This document shows, piece after piece, positions 770 through 48,047 of a stretch of 64,000 nt of DNA. Positions within the stretch are counted from its first letter, which is position 1, and every line of letters begins with the position of its first letter. The stretch spans positions 268,271-332,270 of IMG/VR virus record IMGVR_UViG_3300009703_004110, one strand, 5' to 3'. The notes under the pieces are model-generated. The model had not been told where the DNA came from. It did not search any database and saw only the letters and a program-made list of their open reading frames with translations. The translations under genes and the position numbers were made by a program.

Positions 770-3454
770 TTACCCATCCAAAGTTGAAAGACAACGCTTG
801 CATGTTCCATCCGAAAGATCAGAGTATCTCCAGCACTTGTCACACTTCTCACCTTGATGCCTGCCTACCTTTACTGAGAACTCATGCGAAGCTCCGCCCC
901 AAACATTGATACCCGAAACAATAAAAGCTTCTGTTAAATCTACATGCTTGGAATAAACAGCTTTTTCGATTTCGCAAGGAGGATCGTTAACCGGAAGGTA
1001 TAGTGTTACATCCGCCTCTAGAGACTTATTAAGAACTCCATTAGCTCGTGCCTTTTCAACTTCTTTATTAACAACTTCTCTCATTTCAAAGATTGCATTC
1101 CACCTTGGCACAAGTGCCGCATCAAGGTGAGTATCTTCAGCCTCAGCCCATCCCGCCTGGAACACAGAGTCCCCAAGAAACATCGAACCAAACGTATCCA
1201 TTTCTGCCCAAACTTCTTCAGATAGATACGAACATACTGGCGCGATCATTCTAACCATATCCTGTAGGTAATAACAAAATACAGTCTGGACAGATCTACG
1301 CGCTACACTATCTGATCTTTCGACATACAACCTGTCTTTTGTGATATCCAGATAGAAGGCAGATAGTTTTTGGCGAATAAAATCCATAAGATCACGGTAT
1401 GCACCATAGAAGTCATATTCGTCATAAGCCTGGTTAAAGCGTACTTTCAACTCTTCCAACTCATGAAGCATATATCTATCAACTTCATGCATATCTTCTA
1501 ATGCAACGGAATCTGTTTCGAAATTGAAATCGGATAAGTTACCAAGAAAGAACCTGAATGTATTACGAAGTCTTCTATAATTTTCATTAACCTGATTTAG
1601 AATTTCATCAGAGATTCTTACGTCAGTTTTGTAATCTACAGATACTGTCCATAATCTAAGTACGTCTTTATTGTACCTGCTAACAACATCGTCTGGAGAG
1701 ACCACATTCCCAAGAGACTTACTCATCTTACGACCCTTACCATCAACAACAAATCCATGAGTTACAACGGCCTTGTATGGAAGCTCACTATCGCTTGCTA
1801 CCGCAGTTAGTAAGGAGGTTTGGAACCAGCCACGATATTGATCGTGACCTTCTAGATATAAGTCTGCATTTGATTTGCCAACTGCTCGGTGTGATACACC
1901 AGAGTCGAACCAAACGTCCATGATATCCGTCTCTTTTTTGAGTGAATCTACAAGTGGGTTACCACGTAGATCATACTCTAAACCAAGGGATAATCTTTCT
2001 CCAAGTAATTCTCTTGGTGACCAAGTAAACCATACCTCTGTGCCATACTCTTCAAATACTTCGAGCAATCGCGCAAAGATTCTTTGATTATAAAGAGGCT
2101 GACCATCGTGATAAAAGACAGGGATTGGTACGCCCCAAGCTCTTTGTCGAGAGATACACCAGTCCGGTCTACCAAGAATCATCCCGATCATCTTATCTCT
2201 GCCATGGGGCGGATAAAATTCAACTTCTTTAAGCGAAGCCAATGCCATCACTTCTAAAGTATCTTCTACCTTAACAAACCACTGATTGGTAACTCGAAAA
2301 ACGATTGGCTTCTTCGTTCTCCAATCATGTGGATATGAGTGAGTAAAGTCTTCTTCATAGAGGACCGCATTTAGAGACGCACGCACGCGCTTGTCTGCCT
2401 TCATATAGAAGTCGCCAGCATATACTCCGGCGAGATCATTATAGTGACCTCTTTCATCTAAGATGCAATCACTTCCTAATCCGTGTTCTTGTCCGATCCA
2501 ATAGTCATCTTCACCGTGTCCGGGAGCGATATGAACCAATCCGGTCCCCATTGAGTCGGTAACATGATGCCCAACTACAACAGGACATAGTTCGTTAGAG
2601 AATGGATGATAGTATTCTAAGCCTTCAAAGTCAGTAAATGGCTTTGTACGATAAGAATCTATTTCAAGCTTATCTACAAACTCTGTATAAAGGGCCCTCG
2701 CCAATACGTAACTTCTTCCATCATCCAATGTAAGCAATACGTATGGAACGTCTTTGCCATAAGCAACCGCTCTATTGGCCGGAAGAGTCCATGGTGTTGT
2801 AGTCCAGATTACCAGCTTAACTCTTGCAGTAGTTTCCAACTCGACATAAACCGCCTTAGCGGTCACGTCCTTATATTCAAGCTCTGCTTCAGCTAATGCC
2901 GTTTCAGAAGATGGCGACCAATAAACAGGACGCTTACCTCTGTAAACATATCCGTTACGAAACATTTCATTAAAAACTCTAAGCTGCTCTCGCTTATATT
3001 CTTCATCTAATGTTTCGTATCTATGATCCCAATCAGCATGGATACCTAAGCTTTGAAACTGACGCTCTTGTTCGTCAACCCACTTACGAGCATACTTCCG
3101 GCAAGCAGCACGGACACTACTTCCGCTACTATCTGTGGCCTCTTCCGATGCCTTTAGTTCGATTGGAAGTCCGTGAGTATCCCACCCAGGAACAAACGGT
3201 GCATTATAACCCTGCATTCTCTTTCGCTTTAAGATTGCGTCCTTAAGAACCTTATTTAAAGCGTGGCCGATATGGATATTTCCATTGGCATATGGAGGGC
3301 CGTCATGTAGGATAAATGACTCCCCGTCTTTGTTTAATGAGAGATCATAAACTTCTTGTTCGCCCCATAACTCTTCGGTATCAGAAAAGCTCTGATCGCT
3401 TGGACGCATCCCAAAGTCTGTCTTAGGAAGATTTAGTTTGTGCTTCTTTGACAT
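770..3454 (-). CDS. ileS: isoleucine--tRNA ligase
   Basis: LHDGPPYANG-HIGH, GWDTHGLPIE, WTTTPWTLP editing motif, KMSKS, C-terminal CxxC..CxxC; 894 aa. Confidence 0.97.
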   Translation of the reverse strand: MSKKHKLNLPKTDFGMRPSDQSFSDTEELWGEQEVYDLSLNKDGESFILHDGPPYANGNIHIGHALNKVLKDAILKRKRMQGYNAPFVPGWDTHGLPIELKASEEATDSSGSSVRAACRKYARKWVDEQERQFQSLGIHADWDHRYETLDEEYKREQLRVFNEMFRNGYVYRGKRPVYWSPSSETALAEAELEYKDVTAKAVYVELETTARVKLVIWTTTPWTLPANRAVAYGKDVPYVLLTLDDGRSYVLARALYTEFVDKLEIDSYRTKPFTDFEGLEYYHPFSNELCPVVVGHHVTDSMGTGLVHIAPGHGEDDYWIGQEHGLGSDCILDERGHYNDLAGVYAGDFYMKADKRVRASLNAVLYEEDFTHSYPHDWRTKKPIVFRVTNQWFVKVEDTLEVMALASLKEVEFYPPHGRDKMIGMILGRPDWCISRQRAWGVPIPVFYHDGQPLYNQRIFARLLEVFEEYGTEVWFTWSPRELLGERLSLGLEYDLRGNPLVDSLKKETDIMDVWFDSGVSHRAVGKSNADLYLEGHDQYRGWFQTSLLTAVASDSELPYKAVVTHGFVVDGKGRKMSKSLGNVVSPDDVVSRYNKDVLRLWTVSVDYKTDVRISDEILNQVNENYRRLRNTFRFFLGNLSDFNFETDSVALEDMHEVDRYMLHELEELKVRFNQAYDEYDFYGAYRDLMDFIRQKLSAFYLDITKDRLYVERSDSVARRSVQTVFCYYLQDMVRMIAPVCSYLSEEVWAEMDTFGSMFLGDSVFQAGWAEAEDTHLDAALVPRWNAIFEMREVVNKEVEKARANGVLNKSLEADVTLYLPVNDPPCEIEKAVYSKHVDLTEAFIVSGINVWGGASHEFSVKVGRHQGEKCDKCWRYSDLSDGTCKRCLSTLDG

Positions 3455-3974
3455 GCTTTCTCTCTTTTACTTTCTTTCGTTTTAATTTTCCGAGAGCCGA
3501 TTTATTAGGAACAGATATCATCTGTTCTTCATCAATCTGGTCACCAAAAGAATAGTCTGCTGGTATAGCATTACACCAACTTACTTCTTTCTCGGCAATG
3601 CGATTCCATCTTTTGACCTTTATTAAGTCGCCATGTTCTGCACCACGTACTTGCTCTATGTTTTCGAAAAGTCTGGTAATTCTATCTGAATTTAATGCAA
3701 ATATAGGATCATTCAAAATTACCACGGAGGCGTTTGTACCCTCTCTGACCATATGCTTTGAGCCGTACCACCCATTATATGTAACAGTGTGAACACAATG
3801 CGAATAGTTCGAGCCGGCACCCTTGGTGATAGAGGTGACAACGCCGACATACATATTTCGCTCGCCCTGCCCCGCCTTGCTATAGGCAATTACCTGTCCT
3901 CTGACAAGCTCATTCCCCATTATATCAAGTACAGGTTTCTCTGAGTTTACTAGTTCATATATTTCATCACTCAT
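3423..3974 (-). CDS. hypothetical protein (N-terminus D-x-x-G-x-E-x-x-x-G like 9175-9522)
   Basis: 183-aa ORF downstream of the promoter motif at 3981-4010. Confidence 0.65.
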   Translation of the reverse strand: MSDEIYELVNSEKPVLDIMGNELVRGQVIAYSKAGQGERNMYVGVVTSITKGAGSNYSHCVHTVTYNGWYGSKHMVREGTNASVVILNDPIFALNSDRITRLFENIEQVRGAEHGDLIKVKRWNRIAEKEVSWCNAIPADYSFGDQIDEEQMISVPNKSALGKLKRKKVKERKHVKEAQTKSS

Positions 3975-3980
3975 TTATAT

Positions 3981-4010
3981 ATTACCCTCAGCTTTTTCTT
4001 TTTATGTCAG
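3981..4010 (-). promoter_or_regulatory. putative phage promoter, class A motif
   Basis: CTGACA-TAAAAAGAAAAAGCTGAG-GGTAAT; the same 30-nt pattern occurs at 4 other intergenic sites. Confidence 0.65.
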
Positions 4011-4025
4011 GTTTATATTCTCAAA

Positions 4026-4207
4026 TGGTAGGGGTTAGAAGACTCGAACTTCTTTGCGCCATAATAGTCCAACTCCAACTTCATGTTGCATATCGATCGC
4101 TTTGCAACTTCCATTCTTGCTGAAAACGAGCCGCCACATCACCCGTTCCTAGGTTGGGTATTGCGCACACTCTTATGGTTCGTTTTACACATATAAACTA
4201 AACCCCT
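4026..4207 (-). ncRNA. tRNA-like RNA with an insert of about 110 nt replacing the anticodon loop
   Basis: acceptor AGGGGTT/AACCCCT+ACCA, D arm GTTT/AAAC, T arm AGAAG-TTCGAGT-CTTCT, CCATAA/TTATGG closing the insert. Confidence 0.7.
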
Positions 4208-4210
4208 CAA

Positions 4211-4285
4211 TGGAGCGGATAACTGGATTCGAACCAGCGACATTTACGTTGGCAACGTAATGCTCTACCACTGAGCTATATCCGC
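4211..4285 (-). tRNA. tRNA-Gly(GCC)
   Basis: cloverleaf, TTACG-TTGCCAA-CGTAA, CCA end. Confidence 0.95.
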
Positions 4286-4571
4286 AAATGGGCCAGTCCT
4301 CATTTCTTTTTAAGTCTGACTCACCGCCTTCTTAAAATACCAGATTAGCAGTATTCTAAGCAATTTGTTCTGGCCGCAACCCAGAACACCGCCTTTAGTA
4401 ATAATTTGTCCACTCCTGATCAAATTGGTGGGACACCGCCTTTTAAATTACAATACATATGTGAGGAAGATGTATCATGCGATTGGTTCATCGACAACGC
4501 TTTTTTAGCTGGCCTTGAACACACCGTCTATAAAAATATTAGCTTATCACATGACACACCTTCCTGTTTTA

Positions 4572-5750
4572 TTACTCTACAATACTGGTAACGTAACCGG
4601 CGCCGACAGTCTTGCCTCCCTCACGAATGGCAAAACGCATCTGCTCTTCCATACCAACAGGCTTCTGTAGACGGAAAGTAATATCCGCACGATCACCTGG
4701 GTTTACGATACCCACCTCTCCTACATCAATAGTACCAGTTACATCAGTAGTTCCGAAGAAAAACTGAGGACTGTAACCAGTTCCGAATGGACGGTGACGG
4801 CCGCCCTCGTCCTTAGTAAGAACAAGAACGTGAGCAGTTGCCTCAATGTGAGGAACAATAGCACCAGGAGCAGTAATTACCTGACCTCTCTGGACGCCAT
4901 CACGCTTCACACCACGAAGTAATAGACCAACGTTCATACCAGCTACTGCTGCATCAACATCCTTGTGGAAAGCCTGAGTACCAGTTACCACAGTGTCTTC
5001 GCCTTCGCTGTCAAGACCAACGATCTCAACCTTATCACCAACCCGTAGGGTTCCTCTTTCTACCTTGCCAGTAACTACGGTTCCACGACCCTTGATGTTA
5101 AATACATCTTCAATAGGCATCATGAAAGGAGAGTCATAGTCACGAGTAGGCTCAGGAATAGCATCCAAAGCTGTTACCAACTCTGTAATACAATTCAAAG
5201 CCTCGGCCTCGGCGTCTCCGGCGAGTGCGGCATTAAGAGCTTGTAGAGCGCTACCAAAGATAAAGGCCACATTGGTGTAACCATTGGACTCCAGTTGCTC
5301 TTCCACTTCCATCTCAACTAACTCAAGTAACTCAGGATCAGCTACGTCACACTTGTTAACGAAAACAACCATGTGCTCAACGCCGACCTGACGAGCCAAT
5401 AGAATGTGCTCAACGGTCTGCTTCTGTGGTCCTTGAGAACCATCGACAAGCAAGATTGCTCCATCCATCTGAGACGCGCCAGTAATCATGTTCTTGATAT
5501 AGTCAGCGTGACCCGGACAGTCAATGTGTGCATAGTGACGAGTGTCACTCTCGTATTCTACGTGAGAGGTATTAATGGTAATACCACGCTCCCTCTCTTC
5601 TTTGGCATTGTCAATCTCATCAAAAGACTTAGCCTTGCTTCCCTGCAATACTGCCTGTACCTGAGTAATAGCAGCAGTTAGAGTAGTCTTACCATGATCA
5701 ACGTGGCCGATGGTTCCTACATTTATATGGCACTTAGATTCTGTACTCAT
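4572..5750 (-). CDS. tuf: elongation factor Tu
   Basis: [25 protein letters not shown]; start reassigned to ATG 5750 (RBS, ATGA overlap with upstream HNH). Confidence 0.97.
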
Positions 5751-6316
5751 TTTATTTTCCCTCTTTCTATTGTTGTATATGAAATAATTTTTTTCATATG
5801 TTGAATCCACTCATCAAATGAATGAGAGCGCTTCATATAGTTGCAAGTTTTGCAACATATTTTAATATTGCTTAATACATACCCAACATCATTATTGGGT
5901 CTGTCAAGCCCTATTGTATCTATTTTTGAACCACAATATTCGCATGGTTTTTGCCACAAAGATTTAAACTCAATAAAAGATATACCAAATTTATATCCAC
6001 GTCTTTCAGCTTCGTTTTTATAAATAGTGTATTTACTGACCGGCGAATATCTGTGCCTATCTTTGCACGGTTTACAGTTGGGGTGATACCCATCCTTTCT
6101 GCTTGCTAATTTGTGATATTCAGCAATCGGTTTTTTAACATTACAATGCCCACAAACTTTTTCTGTTATAGCGGGCTTTGCCTTTGTTTTCATTTCTGAT
6201 TGAATTTTCTTTACGCAGTCCTTACATCTGGCCATCACACCCAATCGGCAAGTCTTGTTTTTATAAAACTCTGAAAGCTCTTTCACCTTACTACACTTAG
6301 TACATGTTTTCGTCAT
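5747..6316 (-). CDS. HNH-type homing endonuclease
   Basis: repeated CxxC..K...EFY modules, CEYCG..GLDRPNN..GY..SN...CCKTCN; AT-rich. Confidence 0.85.
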
Positions 6317-6358: not shown

Positions 6359-6628
6359 CTATTGATTAATTTTAATCCCAAAATCTTGATCATTCTCTGA
6401 GGCTTTTAAGATCTCTATGAATGCATCAATATCTTCTTTACTAGGTGTATAGTCATCGCTACCAATATTTACAACAGTCACAGAAGATAAGTCCATAAGT
6501 GCGGCTAGTAAAATTTTTTCTCTAAGTGGGACACCATTACCATCTGTGTACGGTGAAGCTCTAGACCAGATGCGATCACCTGTCGCATCAAGCCTTCTGC
6601 TGATTTCACATACATTCCGGTCTAACAC
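6359..6628 (-). CDS. hypothetical protein
   Basis: 89-aa ORF in gene-dense orientation. Confidence 0.5.
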   Translation of the reverse strand: MLDRNVCEISRRLDATGDRIWSRASPYTDGNGVPLREKILLAALMDLSSVTVVNIGSDDYTPSKEDIDAFIEILKASENDQDFGIKINQ

Positions 6629-9174: not shown

Positions 9175-9522
9175 TTACAATGCTTTGCATATGAATCCTG
9201 ACGGCATCTTTTCGTTTTTTAATGCAAACTTTAAAATTGCAATTATAGAGGCACGGAAAGAAGCGTGAGAACCTTTTGGTATTTCATCTATTATATAGAG
9301 CTGTTGCTCCGATCGTTTTAAATTATGAGCCCTTCCGCTTTCAAAAATAAAGGTATTATTTATGTAATCGTATTTACCTGTTGCGGTGATGACTCTTAAT
9401 GACTTTGCATTTATTTTGGTAATTATAGCTGGATGATATGAGCAATTAGTTCTGCCCATAGCACCTTCAAGGTATAAGACTATATCACCTACTTGGATTT
9501 CTCTTCCAGTTACATCAGTCAT
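9175..9522 (-). CDS. hypothetical protein
   Basis: 115 aa, MTDVTGREIQVGDIV N-terminus typical of small phage proteins. Confidence 0.65.
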   Translation of the reverse strand: MTDVTGREIQVGDIVLYLEGAMGRTNCSYHPAIITKINAKSLRVITATGKYDYINNTFIFESGRAHNLKRSEQQLYIIDEIPKGSHASFRASIIAILKFALKNEKMPSGFICKAL

Positions 9523-9630: not shown

Positions 9631-9667
9631 TGGAAGCGGGTGCCAGAATTGAACTGATTCACCCACT
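9631..9667 (-). ncRNA. tRNA minihelix (acceptor stem plus T arm only)
   Basis: AGTGGGTG-AA-TCAG-TTCAATT-CTGG-CACCCGCT-TCCA. Confidence 0.6.
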
Positions 9668-9671
9668 ATAA

Positions 9672-10283
9672 CTATTTAAAATTATACTTAGCCTTAATCT
9701 CCAAATCAAGAGACGGTATACGAATATGCTGAATCATTCCGTGACTCTTTGCTTCTTCAGGAGTCAGCCACCAATCTGCGTGACCGCGATTGTGAGTCTC
9801 GGTTAGAAAATGCTCTTCATCTTTGCCACAGTTTCTTGCCATTCTTCTGTATACAAGCTGGTTAAGTCTTTCGGTTTCTGCGGCACCAGCTTTTATTTCC
9901 TCAACCTTACCCCATTCCATACTTGAAACATCATGAATTAAGACAGTACTATTGGGTCCGGCAAAACGCATACCATCCTGCCCACAAGTCAAGAGGATAG
10001 CTCCACAACTCATAGCCTTACCTTCAACAATTGTTGCTACAGGCAAAGAGGCTGACTTAATACAATCCATCATAGCAAGCAAAGAATATACTTGGCCGCC
10101 ATATGAGTCAATTACAATTGGGATAACAGGCTGCCCTGTGCCATGAGCCTCTTCCATACTTTCAGTAAATTTCTTAACCGCATCTTCATTAAATTTATTA
10201 ACGCGGATAATTACCGGAGGTATAACCAAATCTTTTGGCTTACGTACAGTTAAAAGAGGGTCAATCTTGCAGGTCGCTCTCAT
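9672..10283 (-). CDS. clpP: ClpP-like serine protease
   Basis: IDSYGG, AMSCGA (catalytic Ser), LIHD, WWLTPEEA. Confidence 0.9.
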   Translation of the reverse strand: MRATCKIDPLLTVRKPKDLVIPPVIIRVNKFNEDAVKKFTESMEEAHGTGQPVIPIVIDSYGGQVYSLLAMMDCIKSASLPVATIVEGKAMSCGAILLTCGQDGMRFAGPNSTVLIHDVSSMEWGKVEEIKAGAAETERLNQLVYRRMARNCGKDEEHFLTETHNRGHADWWLTPEEAKSHGMIQHIRIPSLDLEIKAKYNFK

Positions 10284-35305: not shown

Positions 35306-35381
35306 TGGCACGCTGTAAGGGATTCGAACCCTTGACGCGGAGGTCTAGAATCTCCCGCTCTGACCGCTGAGCTAACAGCGC
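35306..35381 (-). tRNA. amber suppressor tRNA (anticodon CTA)
   Basis: canonical 76-nt numbering gives GGAGA-TTCTAGA-CCTCC; A31-C39 mismatch, G73, CCA end. Confidence 0.85.
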
Positions 35382-41008: not shown

Positions 41009-41086
41009 TGGTAGGGGTAGTTGGATTTGAACCAACGGCCTTTCGCTTATCAGGCGGCTGCTCCAACCAAACTGAGCTATACCCCT
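41009..41086 (-). tRNA. tRNA-Ile(GAT), second divergent copy
   Basis: CGC-CTGATAA-GCG, AGGGGTA/TACCCCT+ACCA. Confidence 0.88.
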
Positions 41087-47964: not shown

Positions 47965-48047
47965 TGGAGCGGGTGACGAGAATCGAACTCGCCATGTTTA
48001 AAACGCCTGCTTGGAAGGCAGGTTCCCCACCTTGGGGACTCACCCGC
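47965..48047 (-). tRNA. tRNA-Gly(TCC) with an enlarged variable region
   Basis: CCTGC-CTTCCAA-GCAGG, U73, 13-nt variable region. Confidence 0.85.

What the first reader, a model, noticed from the sequence alone, without database searches (positions are those of the whole stretch)
4026..4207. 182-nt tRNA shell with a structured insert in place of the anticodon loop
Seen: perfect acceptor, D and T arms and CCA, with about 110 nt holding hairpins (ACCC/GGGT, GTTGCA/TGCAAC) closed by CCATAA/TTATGG. The acceptor is nearly identical to tRNA-Ile at 41009-41086. It has no G3-U70 pair and has a D stem, so it is unlike tmRNA, and the insert is too short for a group I intron. Inference: a tRNA-scaffolded ncRNA, a decoy for anticodon nucleases, or a protein-spliced intron (two RNA ligases are present).
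Basis: partly seen in the sequence, partly recalled or inferred. Interest (0 to 1): 0.72.

Follow-up and report, generated by a model that had tools for sequence, protein, structure and literature searches.

The report
Anticodon-less tRNA-like RNA gene
A 182-base gene in a 332-kb phage has the complete outer shell of a tRNA but carries about 108 bases where the anticodon arm should be. It is most likely a non-decoding small RNA cut out by the tRNA-processing enzymes, or else the relic of a tRNA; it was found in this phage only, and nothing yet shows what it does.

Summary
The tRNA shell at window 4026-4207 (minus strand) is real and far beyond chance. It has a 7/7 Watson-Crick acceptor stem, U8/A9, a 4-bp D stem, a 5-bp T stem with loop UUCGAGU, A73 and an encoded CCA. 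It starts 3 nt after the CCA of tRNA-Gly(GCC), inside a cluster EF-Tu > tRNA-Gly > this element > ORF183 > IleRS.

A strict shell scan of the 332-kb genome finds only real tRNAs plus this element. Simulated genomes give 0.1 shells each, and none with NCCA.

The 108-nt insert is not shown to be structured (z -1.05). It matches no Rfam family and has no second copy in the genome.

No single excision gives an acceptable anticodon arm. The same test resolves 10 of 26 other long tRNA shells from phage contigs.

The phage encodes no EndA, RtcB, SmpB or Ro60. G3-C70 rules out tmRNA.

No homologue was found. In the nearest relatives tRNA-Gly is followed directly by a protein gene, so covariation cannot be tested, and no RNA run was listed.

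Best reading: a lineage-specific, non-decoding tRNA-derived RNA matured by RNase P and 3' trimming, analogous to T4 species 1 RNA (confidence 0.45). Main rival: a tRNA relic (0.25).

The parts
4026..4207 (-). Whole tRNA-like element, 182 nt including the encoded CCA
   Evidence: Sequence. It is the only non-tRNA hit of the strict shell scan. Single copy in the genome.
4201..4207 (-). Acceptor 5' strand AGGGGUU (nt 1-7)
   Evidence: 7/7 Watson-Crick pairs with 4030-4036.
4182..4198 (-). D arm: GUUU, loop AUAUGUGUA, AAAC. The loop lacks the usual GG.
   Evidence: Sequence. The same D stem occurs in element A of this genome and its relatives.
4173..4178 (-). Closing helix 5' strand CCAUAA, preceded by the 3-nt connector GAA
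   Evidence: Pairs with 4059-4064.
4065..4172 (-). 108-nt insert in place of the anticodon loop. It holds the possible hairpins 4140-4160 (UACCC/GGGUG, 11-nt loop) and 4085-4108 (GUUGCA/UGCAAC, 12-nt loop).
   Evidence: Folding is not better than shuffles. No Rfam match. No repeat or antisense target in the genome. No ORF of note.
4059..4064 (-). Closing helix 3' strand UUAUGG
4037..4058 (-). Variable region CGCAA and T arm AGAAG-UUCGAGU-CUUCU
4026..4036 (-). Acceptor 3' strand AACCCCU, discriminator A73, CCA
   Evidence: At least 23 of the 24 real tRNAs of the genome also encode NCCA.
4211..4285 (-). tRNA-Gly(GCC); its CCA lies 3 nt upstream of the element
   Evidence: ARAGORN and Rfam, 75.5 bits. 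Conserved in relatives, where a protein gene follows it directly.
4572..5810 (-). Phage EF-Tu, upstream gene
   Evidence: TIGR00485 544 bits, and the Pfam GTP_EFTU domains.
3423..3974 (-). ORF183, unknown function; starts 51 nt downstream of the element
   Evidence: No Pfam or NCBIfam family. DUF7205-like by the atlas search only. AlphaFold2 model pLDDT 41.7. Relatives carry a 203-aa paralogue where the element sits here.
770..3454 (-). Phage isoleucyl-tRNA synthetase
   Evidence: TIGR00392 809 bits against a cut-off of 621.

Best explanation
It is a lineage-specific, non-decoding RNA derived from a tRNA.

Shown: the gene keeps the part of a tRNA that the maturation enzymes read. That is the acceptor/T-arm minihelix, the L-shape core nucleotides, A73 and an encoded CCA. 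It sits 3 nt behind tRNA-Gly on the coding strand, with no promoter-like or convincing terminator-like site between EF-Tu and ORF183.

Inferred: it is transcribed with EF-Tu and tRNA-Gly. RNase P cuts at A1, and the 3' end is trimmed back to CCA. The result is a stable ~182-nt RNA whose ~108-nt domain projects where the anticodon arm would be. This is the layout of engineered 'tRNA scaffolds', and in outline that of tmRNA and T4 species 1 RNA.

It cannot read a codon. What the insert does is unknown. My guess is that the shell serves for processing and stability, and perhaps for binding proteins that recognise the acceptor end, while the insert is the variable cargo.
For: - Shell perfect and non-random.
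- The tertiary-core nucleotides are those of a class I tRNA (read).
- Encoded CCA, as in at least 23 of the phage's 24 tRNAs.
- 3-nt spacing from tRNA-Gly.
- No sigma-70-like promoter on the minus strand between EF-Tu and ORF183. The only terminator-like hit there is a weak 5-bp stem spanning the tRNA-Gly/element junction.
- No anticodon arm is recoverable. This is not what a simple recent insertion into an anticodon loop would leave.
- The lineage keeps other non-canonical tRNA-like genes under selection. Element A (L047:635-739) is conserved in L028 and L030 with 3 compensatory pairs.
- T4 rnaC, a stable RNA at the end of the T4 tRNA cluster, likewise has a T arm and an acceptor-like stem around a large insert.
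- Established knowledge: bacterial RNase P needs only the acceptor/T-arm minihelix and RCCA. RNAs put in place of the anticodon arm of a tRNA are processed and stable in E. coli (Ponchon and Dardel 2007).
Against: - No homologue anywhere searched, so no covariation and no sign of selection on either shell or insert.
- The nearest relatives lack it at the syntenic site.
- No RNA run was listed, so expression is unproven.
- The insert folds no better than shuffled sequence.
- The D loop lacks G19, and the junction has 3 nt instead of 1, so the L-shape may be loosened.
Confidence: 0.45

Rival explanations
1. It is a relic. A former tRNA gene (Ile- or Trp-like by its acceptor) had its anticodon arm replaced by unrelated DNA. 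It may still be cut by the tRNA enzymes, but it has no function of its own and is on its way out.
For: - Orphan: one genome, one copy.
- Absent at the syntenic site in relatives.
- Insert with ordinary folding energy and no family match.
- D loop without GG.
- The phage lacks tRNA-Trp, tRNA-Asn and a credible tRNA-Arg, so a lost tRNA is plausible.
Against: - All 16 shell pairs are intact, together with CCA and the core tertiary nucleotides. A simple insertion would leave U33 or other anticodon-loop remnants at the junctions, and none is present.
- The coding in this region is dense, and 182 nt of dead DNA in a tight operon is not expected to last long.
- Without relatives its age cannot be judged, so this rival is not excluded.
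Confidence: 0.25
2. It is a tRNA mimic that acts through its acceptor end. Either it is a cis- or trans-acting regulator of the neighbouring IleRS/EF-Tu genes, or it is a sponge for host factors or defence enzymes that act on the acceptor stem or CCA end.
For: - Ile-like acceptor with A73 and U12-A23.
- Position between EF-Tu and IleRS.
- The possible hairpin-2 loop contains GAU twice.
- Established knowledge: some toxins modify tRNA 3' ends, and some aaRS mRNAs carry tRNA mimics.
Against: - Relatives express the same IleRS cluster without it.
- By established knowledge IleRS relies on the anticodon loop, which is missing here.
- GAU in a 12-nt loop is weak evidence, and 6-nt palindromes occur about 1.8 times per 120 nt by chance.
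- Whether a sponge against catalytic enzymes could outnumber cellular tRNA is doubtful.
Confidence: 0.12
3. It is an interrupted tRNA whose ~108-nt intervening sequence is removed, by self-splicing or by proteins, to give a working tRNA. A giant variable arm behind a weak anticodon arm (GAACC-AUAAGAG-UGUGC, anticodon AAG) is a variant of this reading.
For: - Other phage contigs sampled here do carry insert-bearing tRNAs: a group I intron in L018:1368-1598, 57-nt inserts in L004, a ~100-nt insert in L095 that resolves to tRNA-Arg(UCG), and 55-70-nt variable-region inserts in L018 and L007.
- The phage has two RNA ligases and lacks several tRNAs.
- ARAGORN calls low-quality Leu(AAG) structures on some excision products.
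Against: - No excision gives a 5-bp or even 4-of-5 anticodon stem with U33 and R37.
- No group I match at E up to 10, and 108 nt is well below known group I sizes.
- I saw no bulge-helix-bulge by eye.
- No EndA or RtcB.
- The Leu(AAG) arm has only 3 of 5 pairs and competes with the stronger closing helix.
Confidence: 0.07
4. It is a miniature tmRNA-like molecule.
For: Same topology: a tRNA-like domain with the anticodon arm replaced by a larger domain.
Against: - G3-C70 instead of G3-U70.
- A true D stem.
- No tag reading frame ending inside the RNA.
- ARAGORN tmRNA mode and the Rfam tmRNA models are negative.
- No SmpB in the phage.
Confidence: 0.01

Closest known systems
Phage T4 species 1 RNA (rnaC), a small stable RNA at the end of the T4 tRNA cluster
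   Same: - Encoded in line with tRNA genes.
- T arm with a canonical loop (CCGGG-UUCGAAU-CCCGG) next to an acceptor-like stem.
- About 100 nt of other sequence in between.
- No anticodon.
- Function unknown. Processing with the tRNAs is from my own knowledge of the older T4 literature.
   Different: - The T4 acceptor-like stem has only 5 of 7 pairs.
- T4 rnaC has no D arm and no encoded CCA.
- No sequence similarity to this element.
- No family model exists, so membership cannot be tested.
tmRNA
   Same: A tRNA-like acceptor/T-arm domain with the anticodon arm replaced by a long helix leading to a larger domain.
   Different: G3-C70, a real D stem, no tag ORF, a size of 182 nt against about 360 nt, no SmpB, and negative models.
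Engineered tRNA scaffolds (Ponchon and Dardel 2007)
   Same: Identical design: cargo RNA grafted onto the anticodon stem of a tRNA, relying on cellular tRNA processing for defined ends and stability.
   Different: Those are artificial. Here the layout is natural, and neither processing nor stability has been shown.
Bacterial Y RNA YrlA (Rfam RF02553)
   Same: A non-coding RNA with a tRNA-like module: T arm, D arm and acceptor-like stem.
   Different: The topology is reversed, since YrlA's ends lie in the Ro-binding stem. The Rfam hit is E=2 and spans the tRNA-Gly T arm. The phage has no Ro60/TROVE protein.
Insert-bearing tRNAs in other phage contigs (L095:6183-6350, L004:6448-6574, L007:1453-1591)
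   Same: tRNA shells of 120-170 nt that ARAGORN misses, in tRNA-rich regions of large phage contigs. L004 and L007 also carry an EF-Tu gene. L095 has an insert of about 100 nt.
   Different: In those an anticodon arm is present or recoverable by one excision: Arg UCG, Lys CUU. Rfam's tRNA model scores two of them at 40-42 bits. This element has no recoverable arm and no Rfam score.

Membership tests
Canonical (decoding) tRNA | Acceptor stem, D arm, T arm with T-loop consensus, discriminator and CCA | tested here: met
   Sequence reading and the strict shell scan.
Canonical (decoding) tRNA | 5-bp anticodon stem with a 7-nt loop, U33 and purine 37, contiguous or after one excision | tested here: not met
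   No such hairpin. No solution at 5/5 or at 4/5 pairs. ARAGORN and the Rfam tRNA model are silent.
tmRNA | G3-U70 alanine identity pair | tested here: not met
   G3-C70.
tmRNA | Tag reading frame with a stop inside the RNA; SmpB partner | tested here: not met
   ARAGORN -m negative. Rfam tmRNA models negative. No SmpB in the phage; the host's SmpB was not examined.
tRNA with a group I intron | Group I catalytic core (P3-P9) | tested here: not met
   RF00028 has no match at E up to 10. The same model finds the intron in L018 at 76.6 bits. The insert is 108 nt.
tRNA with a group I intron | Exons that join into a normal anticodon loop | tested here: not met
tRNA with an archaeal/eukaryal-type protein-spliced intron | Bulge-helix-bulge at the exon-intron junctions | tested here: not met
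   Read by eye around the closing helix: no 3-nt bulge, 4-bp helix, 3-nt bulge arrangement. No formal BHB search program was run.
tRNA with an archaeal/eukaryal-type protein-spliced intron | Splicing endonuclease (EndA) and RtcB-type ligase available | tested here: not met
   PF01974 and PF01139 are absent from the phage while the controls ring. The host is unknown, but the EF-Tu is of the bacterial type.
YrlA / Y RNA | Match to RF02553 and a Ro60 partner | tested here: not met
   15.4 bits against a gathering score of 69, overlapping tRNA-Gly. No TROVE protein.
T4 species 1 RNA-like stable RNAs | Discrete stable transcript processed from a tRNA precursor | not testable with these tools
   No RNA run was listed. 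Only DNA runs hold the locus.

The most novel reading that the evidence does not exclude
This phage and its relatives, which encode EF-Tu, aminoacyl-tRNA synthetases and dozens of tRNAs, maintain a repertoire of non-decoding tRNA-shaped RNAs. Candidates seen here are this element, the conserved element A with a hairpin in its D loop, the acceptor/T-arm minihelix at about 9631-9671, and element C in relatives. On this reading they use the tRNA maturation and acceptor-binding machinery for something other than decoding. This element would then be a natural tRNA scaffold that presents a fast-evolving ~108-nt functional domain.
Probability: 0.18. Interest if true: 0.75.

Novelty: new variant of a known kind. 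Interest (0 to 1): 0.5.

Why it matters
If it is expressed and stable, it would be a natural counterpart of the engineered tRNA scaffold. It would also be a second, much cleaner example of the unexplained 'species 1 RNA' type that has sat in the T4 tRNA cluster for fifty years.

It also shows that standard tRNA finders miss a layer of tRNA-shaped genes in very large phages. In about 1.6 Mb of phage loci fetched here (EF-Tu neighbourhoods and D-arm/T-loop pattern matches), 26 shells of 98-200 nt went uncalled.

If it is only a relic, it is an ordinary by-product of rapid tRNA gene turnover.

Tried and rejected
- Homologue searches, all empty for this element:
  - blastn against 50,697 phage records.
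  - Exact 28-mer of the 3' end in IMG/VR.
  - nhmmer and blastn on 26 EF-Tu loci.
  - Covariance model R1 on 18 whole large phage records, on 6 syntenic loci and on one more record.
  - The tRNA-Gly 3' half as an anchor in IMG/VR and JGI metagenomes. This gave 10 loci; only L043 has the element, and it is identical to the window over all 6405 bases, so it is not an independent sample.
  - A gapped D-arm/T-loop pattern in IMG/VR. This gave 37 loci, mostly tandem tRNAs. One real long shell, L095, turned out to be an interrupted tRNA-Arg.
- Synteny through ORF183 homologues: the relatives have a 203-aa paralogue in that place.
- Sequencing runs: only two DNA runs were listed. One holds the whole query and may be the source; the other shares only conserved EF-Tu and tRNA words. 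No RNA run was listed.
- Internal repeat GAAGUUGGAGU / GAAGUUCGAGU: not significant, since 23 of 200 shuffles do as well.
- Palindromic loops CCUAGG and CGAUCG as kissing-loop dimer sites: dropped, because about 1.8 six-base palindromes are expected in 120 nt by chance.
- Antisense targets or repeats of the insert in the genome: none.
- Small ORFs on either strand: nothing credible.
- ORF183 structure: AlphaFold2 pLDDT 41.7, unusable. The atlas search gives only a weak DUF7205 lead.
- Shell against 321 tRNAs of this and other phage loci: no clear donor.
- Complex prediction was not used, because it gives no verdict for RNA.

Full report
**What is there.**

Read on the minus strand, window 4207 down to 4026 is a 182-nt sequence with the complete outer shell of a tRNA:
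- Acceptor AGGGGUU/AACCCCU, 7 Watson-Crick pairs.
- U8 A9.
- D stem GUUU/AAAC around a 9-nt loop.
- G26.
- Five-nt variable region CGCAA.
- T arm AGAAG-UUCGAGU-CUUCU.
- A73 and an encoded CCA.

The nucleotides that build the tRNA core are in place: U8-A14, A21, G10-C25-G45, U12-A23-A9, G53-C61, U54-A58, C56 and purine 57. The D loop has only one of the two usual G residues.

Between G26 and the variable region there is no anticodon arm. Instead come two extra bases (AA), a 6-bp helix CCAUAA/UUAUGG, and 108 nt inside that helix.

The element begins 3 nt after the CCA of tRNA-Gly(GCC) (4211-4285) and ends 51 nt before the start codon of ORF183.

**Is it more than chance?**

A strict scanner looked for a 7-bp acceptor, a 4-bp D stem, and a 5-bp T stem with the T-loop consensus, at total lengths up to 500 nt. 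Run on both strands of the whole 332,270-bp genome, it returned 11 real tRNAs and this element, nothing else.

Thirty simulated genomes with the same dinucleotide content gave 0.1 shells of 95-500 nt per genome, and none followed by NCCA.

An independently assembled 22-kb contig, from a run that may be the source sample, covers 3000-6000 without a difference and at even depth. The arrangement is therefore not an assembly join.

The shell is real. The claim that the insert is 'structured' is not supported:
- Its folding energy is ordinary (z -1.05; whole element z -0.62).

**Context.**

The window is the last 64 kb of a 332-kb IMG/VR virus record, 99% complete by CheckV and 39.7% G+C.

All 24 credible tRNA genes lie on the minus strand between genome positions 258 and 332 kb, scattered among protein genes. 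At least 23 of them encode NCCA.

The local gene order on the minus strand is:
- EF-Tu (4572-5810; TIGR00485, 544 bits).
- tRNA-Gly.
- The element.
- ORF183 (no family).
- Isoleucyl-tRNA synthetase (770-3454; TIGR00392, 809 bits).

No sigma-70-like promoter lies on that strand between EF-Tu and ORF183. The only terminator-like hit is a weak 5-bp stem across the tRNA-Gly/element junction. Co-transcription is therefore the simplest assumption.

**Relatives.**

ORF183 has only three homologue clusters among 5.8 billion proteins, at 45-56% identity.

Their contigs show the same cluster, but there tRNA-Gly is followed within about 20-40 nt by a 203-aa paralogue of ORF183. No tRNA-like element lies between them.

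A covariance model of the element (R1) found nothing:
- Not in those loci.
- Not in 18 whole records of large phages that carry EF-Tu.
- Not in a further record.

Sequence searches of phage records, IMG/VR and JGI metagenomes gave only L043. That stretch is identical to the window over all 6405 bases, so it adds no independent sample.

The element is so far an orphan, and covariation cannot be tested.

Only two DNA runs were listed. One holds the whole query and may be the source; the other shares only conserved EF-Tu and tRNA words. No RNA run was listed.

**What it is not.**

tmRNA:
- G3-C70, a true D stem and no internal tag frame.
- ARAGORN tmRNA mode and the Rfam tmRNA models are negative.
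- No SmpB.

Group I intron:
- No RF00028 match at E up to 10. The same model finds a group I intron inside a tRNA of a related phage at 76.6 bits.

Protein-spliced intron:
- I saw no bulge-helix-bulge at the junction by eye.
- No EndA and no RtcB.

Y RNA:
- Reversed topology, a meaningless Rfam score, and no Ro60.

**The excision test.**

If the 108 nt were an intervening sequence, removing one stretch should leave a 5-bp stem and a 7-nt loop with U33 and a purine at 37.

Every split of the 17-nt arm between the two sides was tried, with variable regions of 4-5 and 9-23 nt. There is no solution, not even with 4 of 5 stem pairs.

Controls on the test:
- With the insert shuffled, 7% of sequences give a 5/5 solution by chance, and 43% give a 4/5 one.
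- 26 other tRNA shells of 98-200 nt that ARAGORN misses were found in the phage loci fetched here. Of these, 10 are resolved at 5/5. Examples are L095:6183-6350 (tRNA-Arg UCG) and L004:6448-6574 (tRNA-Lys CUU, 57-nt insert).

ARAGORN run on all 1,943 single-excision products returns only poor structures. The commonest is a Leu(AAG) call with 3 of 5 stem pairs.

So this element differs in kind from the interrupted tRNAs found in those other phage contigs: it has no anticodon arm to recover.

**Most likely mechanism.**

The parts that are kept are the ones the tRNA maturation enzymes, and proteins that bind the acceptor end, are known to recognise: the acceptor/T-arm minihelix, A73 and CCA. The part that decodes is gone.

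I therefore read it as a non-decoding tRNA-derived RNA. It would be released from the EF-Tu/tRNA-Gly transcript by RNase P at A1 and trimmed to its CCA. The L-shaped core would give stability, and the 108-nt domain would sit on the former anticodon stem.

This is the layout of engineered tRNA scaffolds and, loosely, of tmRNA. The nearest natural analogue I could examine is T4 species 1 RNA (rnaC). It has a canonical T arm and a 5-of-7 acceptor-like stem around about 100 nt of other sequence, and it lies at the end of the T4 tRNA cluster.

Steps shown: the architecture, the position, and the absence of an anticodon arm.
Steps inferred: transcription, processing, stability, and any role of the insert.
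Confidence: 0.45.

**Rivals.**

- A relic of a tRNA (0.25). It fits the orphan status, the unremarkable insert and the missing Trp, Asn and Arg tRNAs. It fits less well with 16 of 16 intact shell pairs, and with the lack of any anticodon-loop remnant at the junctions.
- An acceptor-end mimic that regulates IleRS/EF-Tu or soaks up a host factor (0.12). It is suggested by the Ile-like acceptor, which is 6 of 7 identical to tRNA-Ile 41009-41086 with A73, and by the neighbouring IleRS. But the relatives run the same cluster without it, and the acceptor similarity is shared with Trp and Gln tRNAs.
- A spliced tRNA (0.07) and a tmRNA-like molecule (0.01) fail the tests above.

**Wider setting.**

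The phage and its relatives hold other tRNA-shaped genes that the finders miss:
- Element A, 105 nt, just outside the window. It has a ~38-nt D loop containing a hairpin and a GAA loop without U33. It is conserved in two relatives with compensatory changes.
- An acceptor/T-arm minihelix with CCA in an intergenic spacer at about 9631-9671.
- An 82-nt element C, present in relatives only.

This makes a functional, non-decoding tRNA-like RNA more believable in this lineage. It does not show that this particular one is functional.

**Verdict.**

A real and unusual tRNA-derived gene, best filed as a new variant of the tRNA-like stable RNAs of phage tRNA clusters. It is an orphan, its function is unknown, and it may be a relic. 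Interest 0.5.

Noticed in passing
L047:635-739 minus (G000:C1:266934-267038, 1.2 kb before the window start); homologues at L028:10405-10509 and L030:8028-8132: Element A is a 105-nt tRNA-like gene downstream of tRNA-Ala(UGC) that ARAGORN misses. It has the same UA-GUUU...AAAC-G D stem as the finding and a ~38-nt D loop holding a hairpin. Its anticodon loop is UGGAAGG here and UUGAACG in relatives (GAA in both; no U33 in this phage). It ends in ACCA. It is conserved in two relatives with 3 compensatory pairs.
   Followed up: partly
window 9631-9671, minus strand: An acceptor/T-arm 'minihelix' followed by UUCCA lies in the spacer between ORFs 9672-10283 and 9175-9522. The acceptor-like stem is GUGGGUG/CACCCGC and the T hairpin is UCAG-UUCAAUU-CUGG. 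Its 3' end resembles that of tRNA-Gly(UCC). It could be a tRNA 3'-half relic or a processing signal.
   Followed up: partly
window 4322-4330, 4387-4395, 4434-4442, minus strand: Three copies of AAGGCGGTG sit in the 285-nt spacer between EF-Tu and tRNA-Gly, and two are followed by a short inverted repeat. They are the only copies in the window (0.57 expected). A related GGTGAG-hairpin-CATTT motif precedes tRNA-Gly in the relatives.
   Followed up: partly
L030:8354-8435 and L028:10729-10810: Element C is an 82-nt tRNA-like gene in relatives. Its acceptor stem covaries (ACGAAAC/GUUUCGU against GCGGGU/ACCCGC), and an 8-nt palindrome GRCUAGYC in the D loop stays a palindrome through a double change. 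It is absent at the syntenic site of this phage.
   Followed up: partly
L095:6183-6350 and L095:5885-6027, minus strand (IMGVR_UViG_3300028591_000002, 178 kb): Two long tRNA shells lie side by side. The 168-nt one scores 40.2 bits with Rfam's tRNA model across a 105-nt gap, and becomes tRNA-Arg(UCG) if ~100 nt are removed between positions 30 and 31. The 143-nt one has G3-U70, A73 and a UAGUC motif before a short frame, which looks like a miniature tmRNA.
   Followed up: partly
L004:6305-6430 and 6448-6574; L018:2528-2648 and 2686-2808; L007:1453-1591; L169 (three copies): Families of 55-70-nt inserts occur inside phage tRNAs, either in the 5' strand of the anticodon stem or in the variable region. 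The L004 pair and the L169 trio each share sequence among themselves, and both sets end in (G/C)UUAC-like motifs. The L018/L007 inserts share a covarying hairpin with loop UGAAAG. How or whether they are removed is unknown. In all, 26 uncalled shells of 98-200 nt turned up in about 1.6 Mb of sampled phage loci.
   Followed up: partly
L006:1349-1773; L018:1368-1598; L004:7515-7597: Large phages that share the EF-Tu gene also carry a GOLLD RNA (156 bits), a group I intron inside a tRNA (76.6 bits) and a small SRP RNA (42 bits) in their tRNA regions.
   Followed up: no
window 47965-48047; genome 258801-258892; window 35306-35381: Some of the phage's own tRNAs are odd. tRNA-Gly(UCC) is 83 nt with a 5-6-bp D stem and a long variable region, and scores 44.5 bits on the tRNA-Sec model. 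tRNA-Lys(CUU) is 92 nt with a long variable arm. There is an amber-suppressor tRNA(CUA). No tRNA-Asn, tRNA-Trp or credible tRNA-Arg was found.
   Followed up: no
window 5747-6316, minus strand: An HNH / endonuclease VII-like gene (phrog_1035, E 1e-30) lies directly upstream of EF-Tu. It is a possible homing endonuclease in the translation-gene cluster.
   Followed up: no
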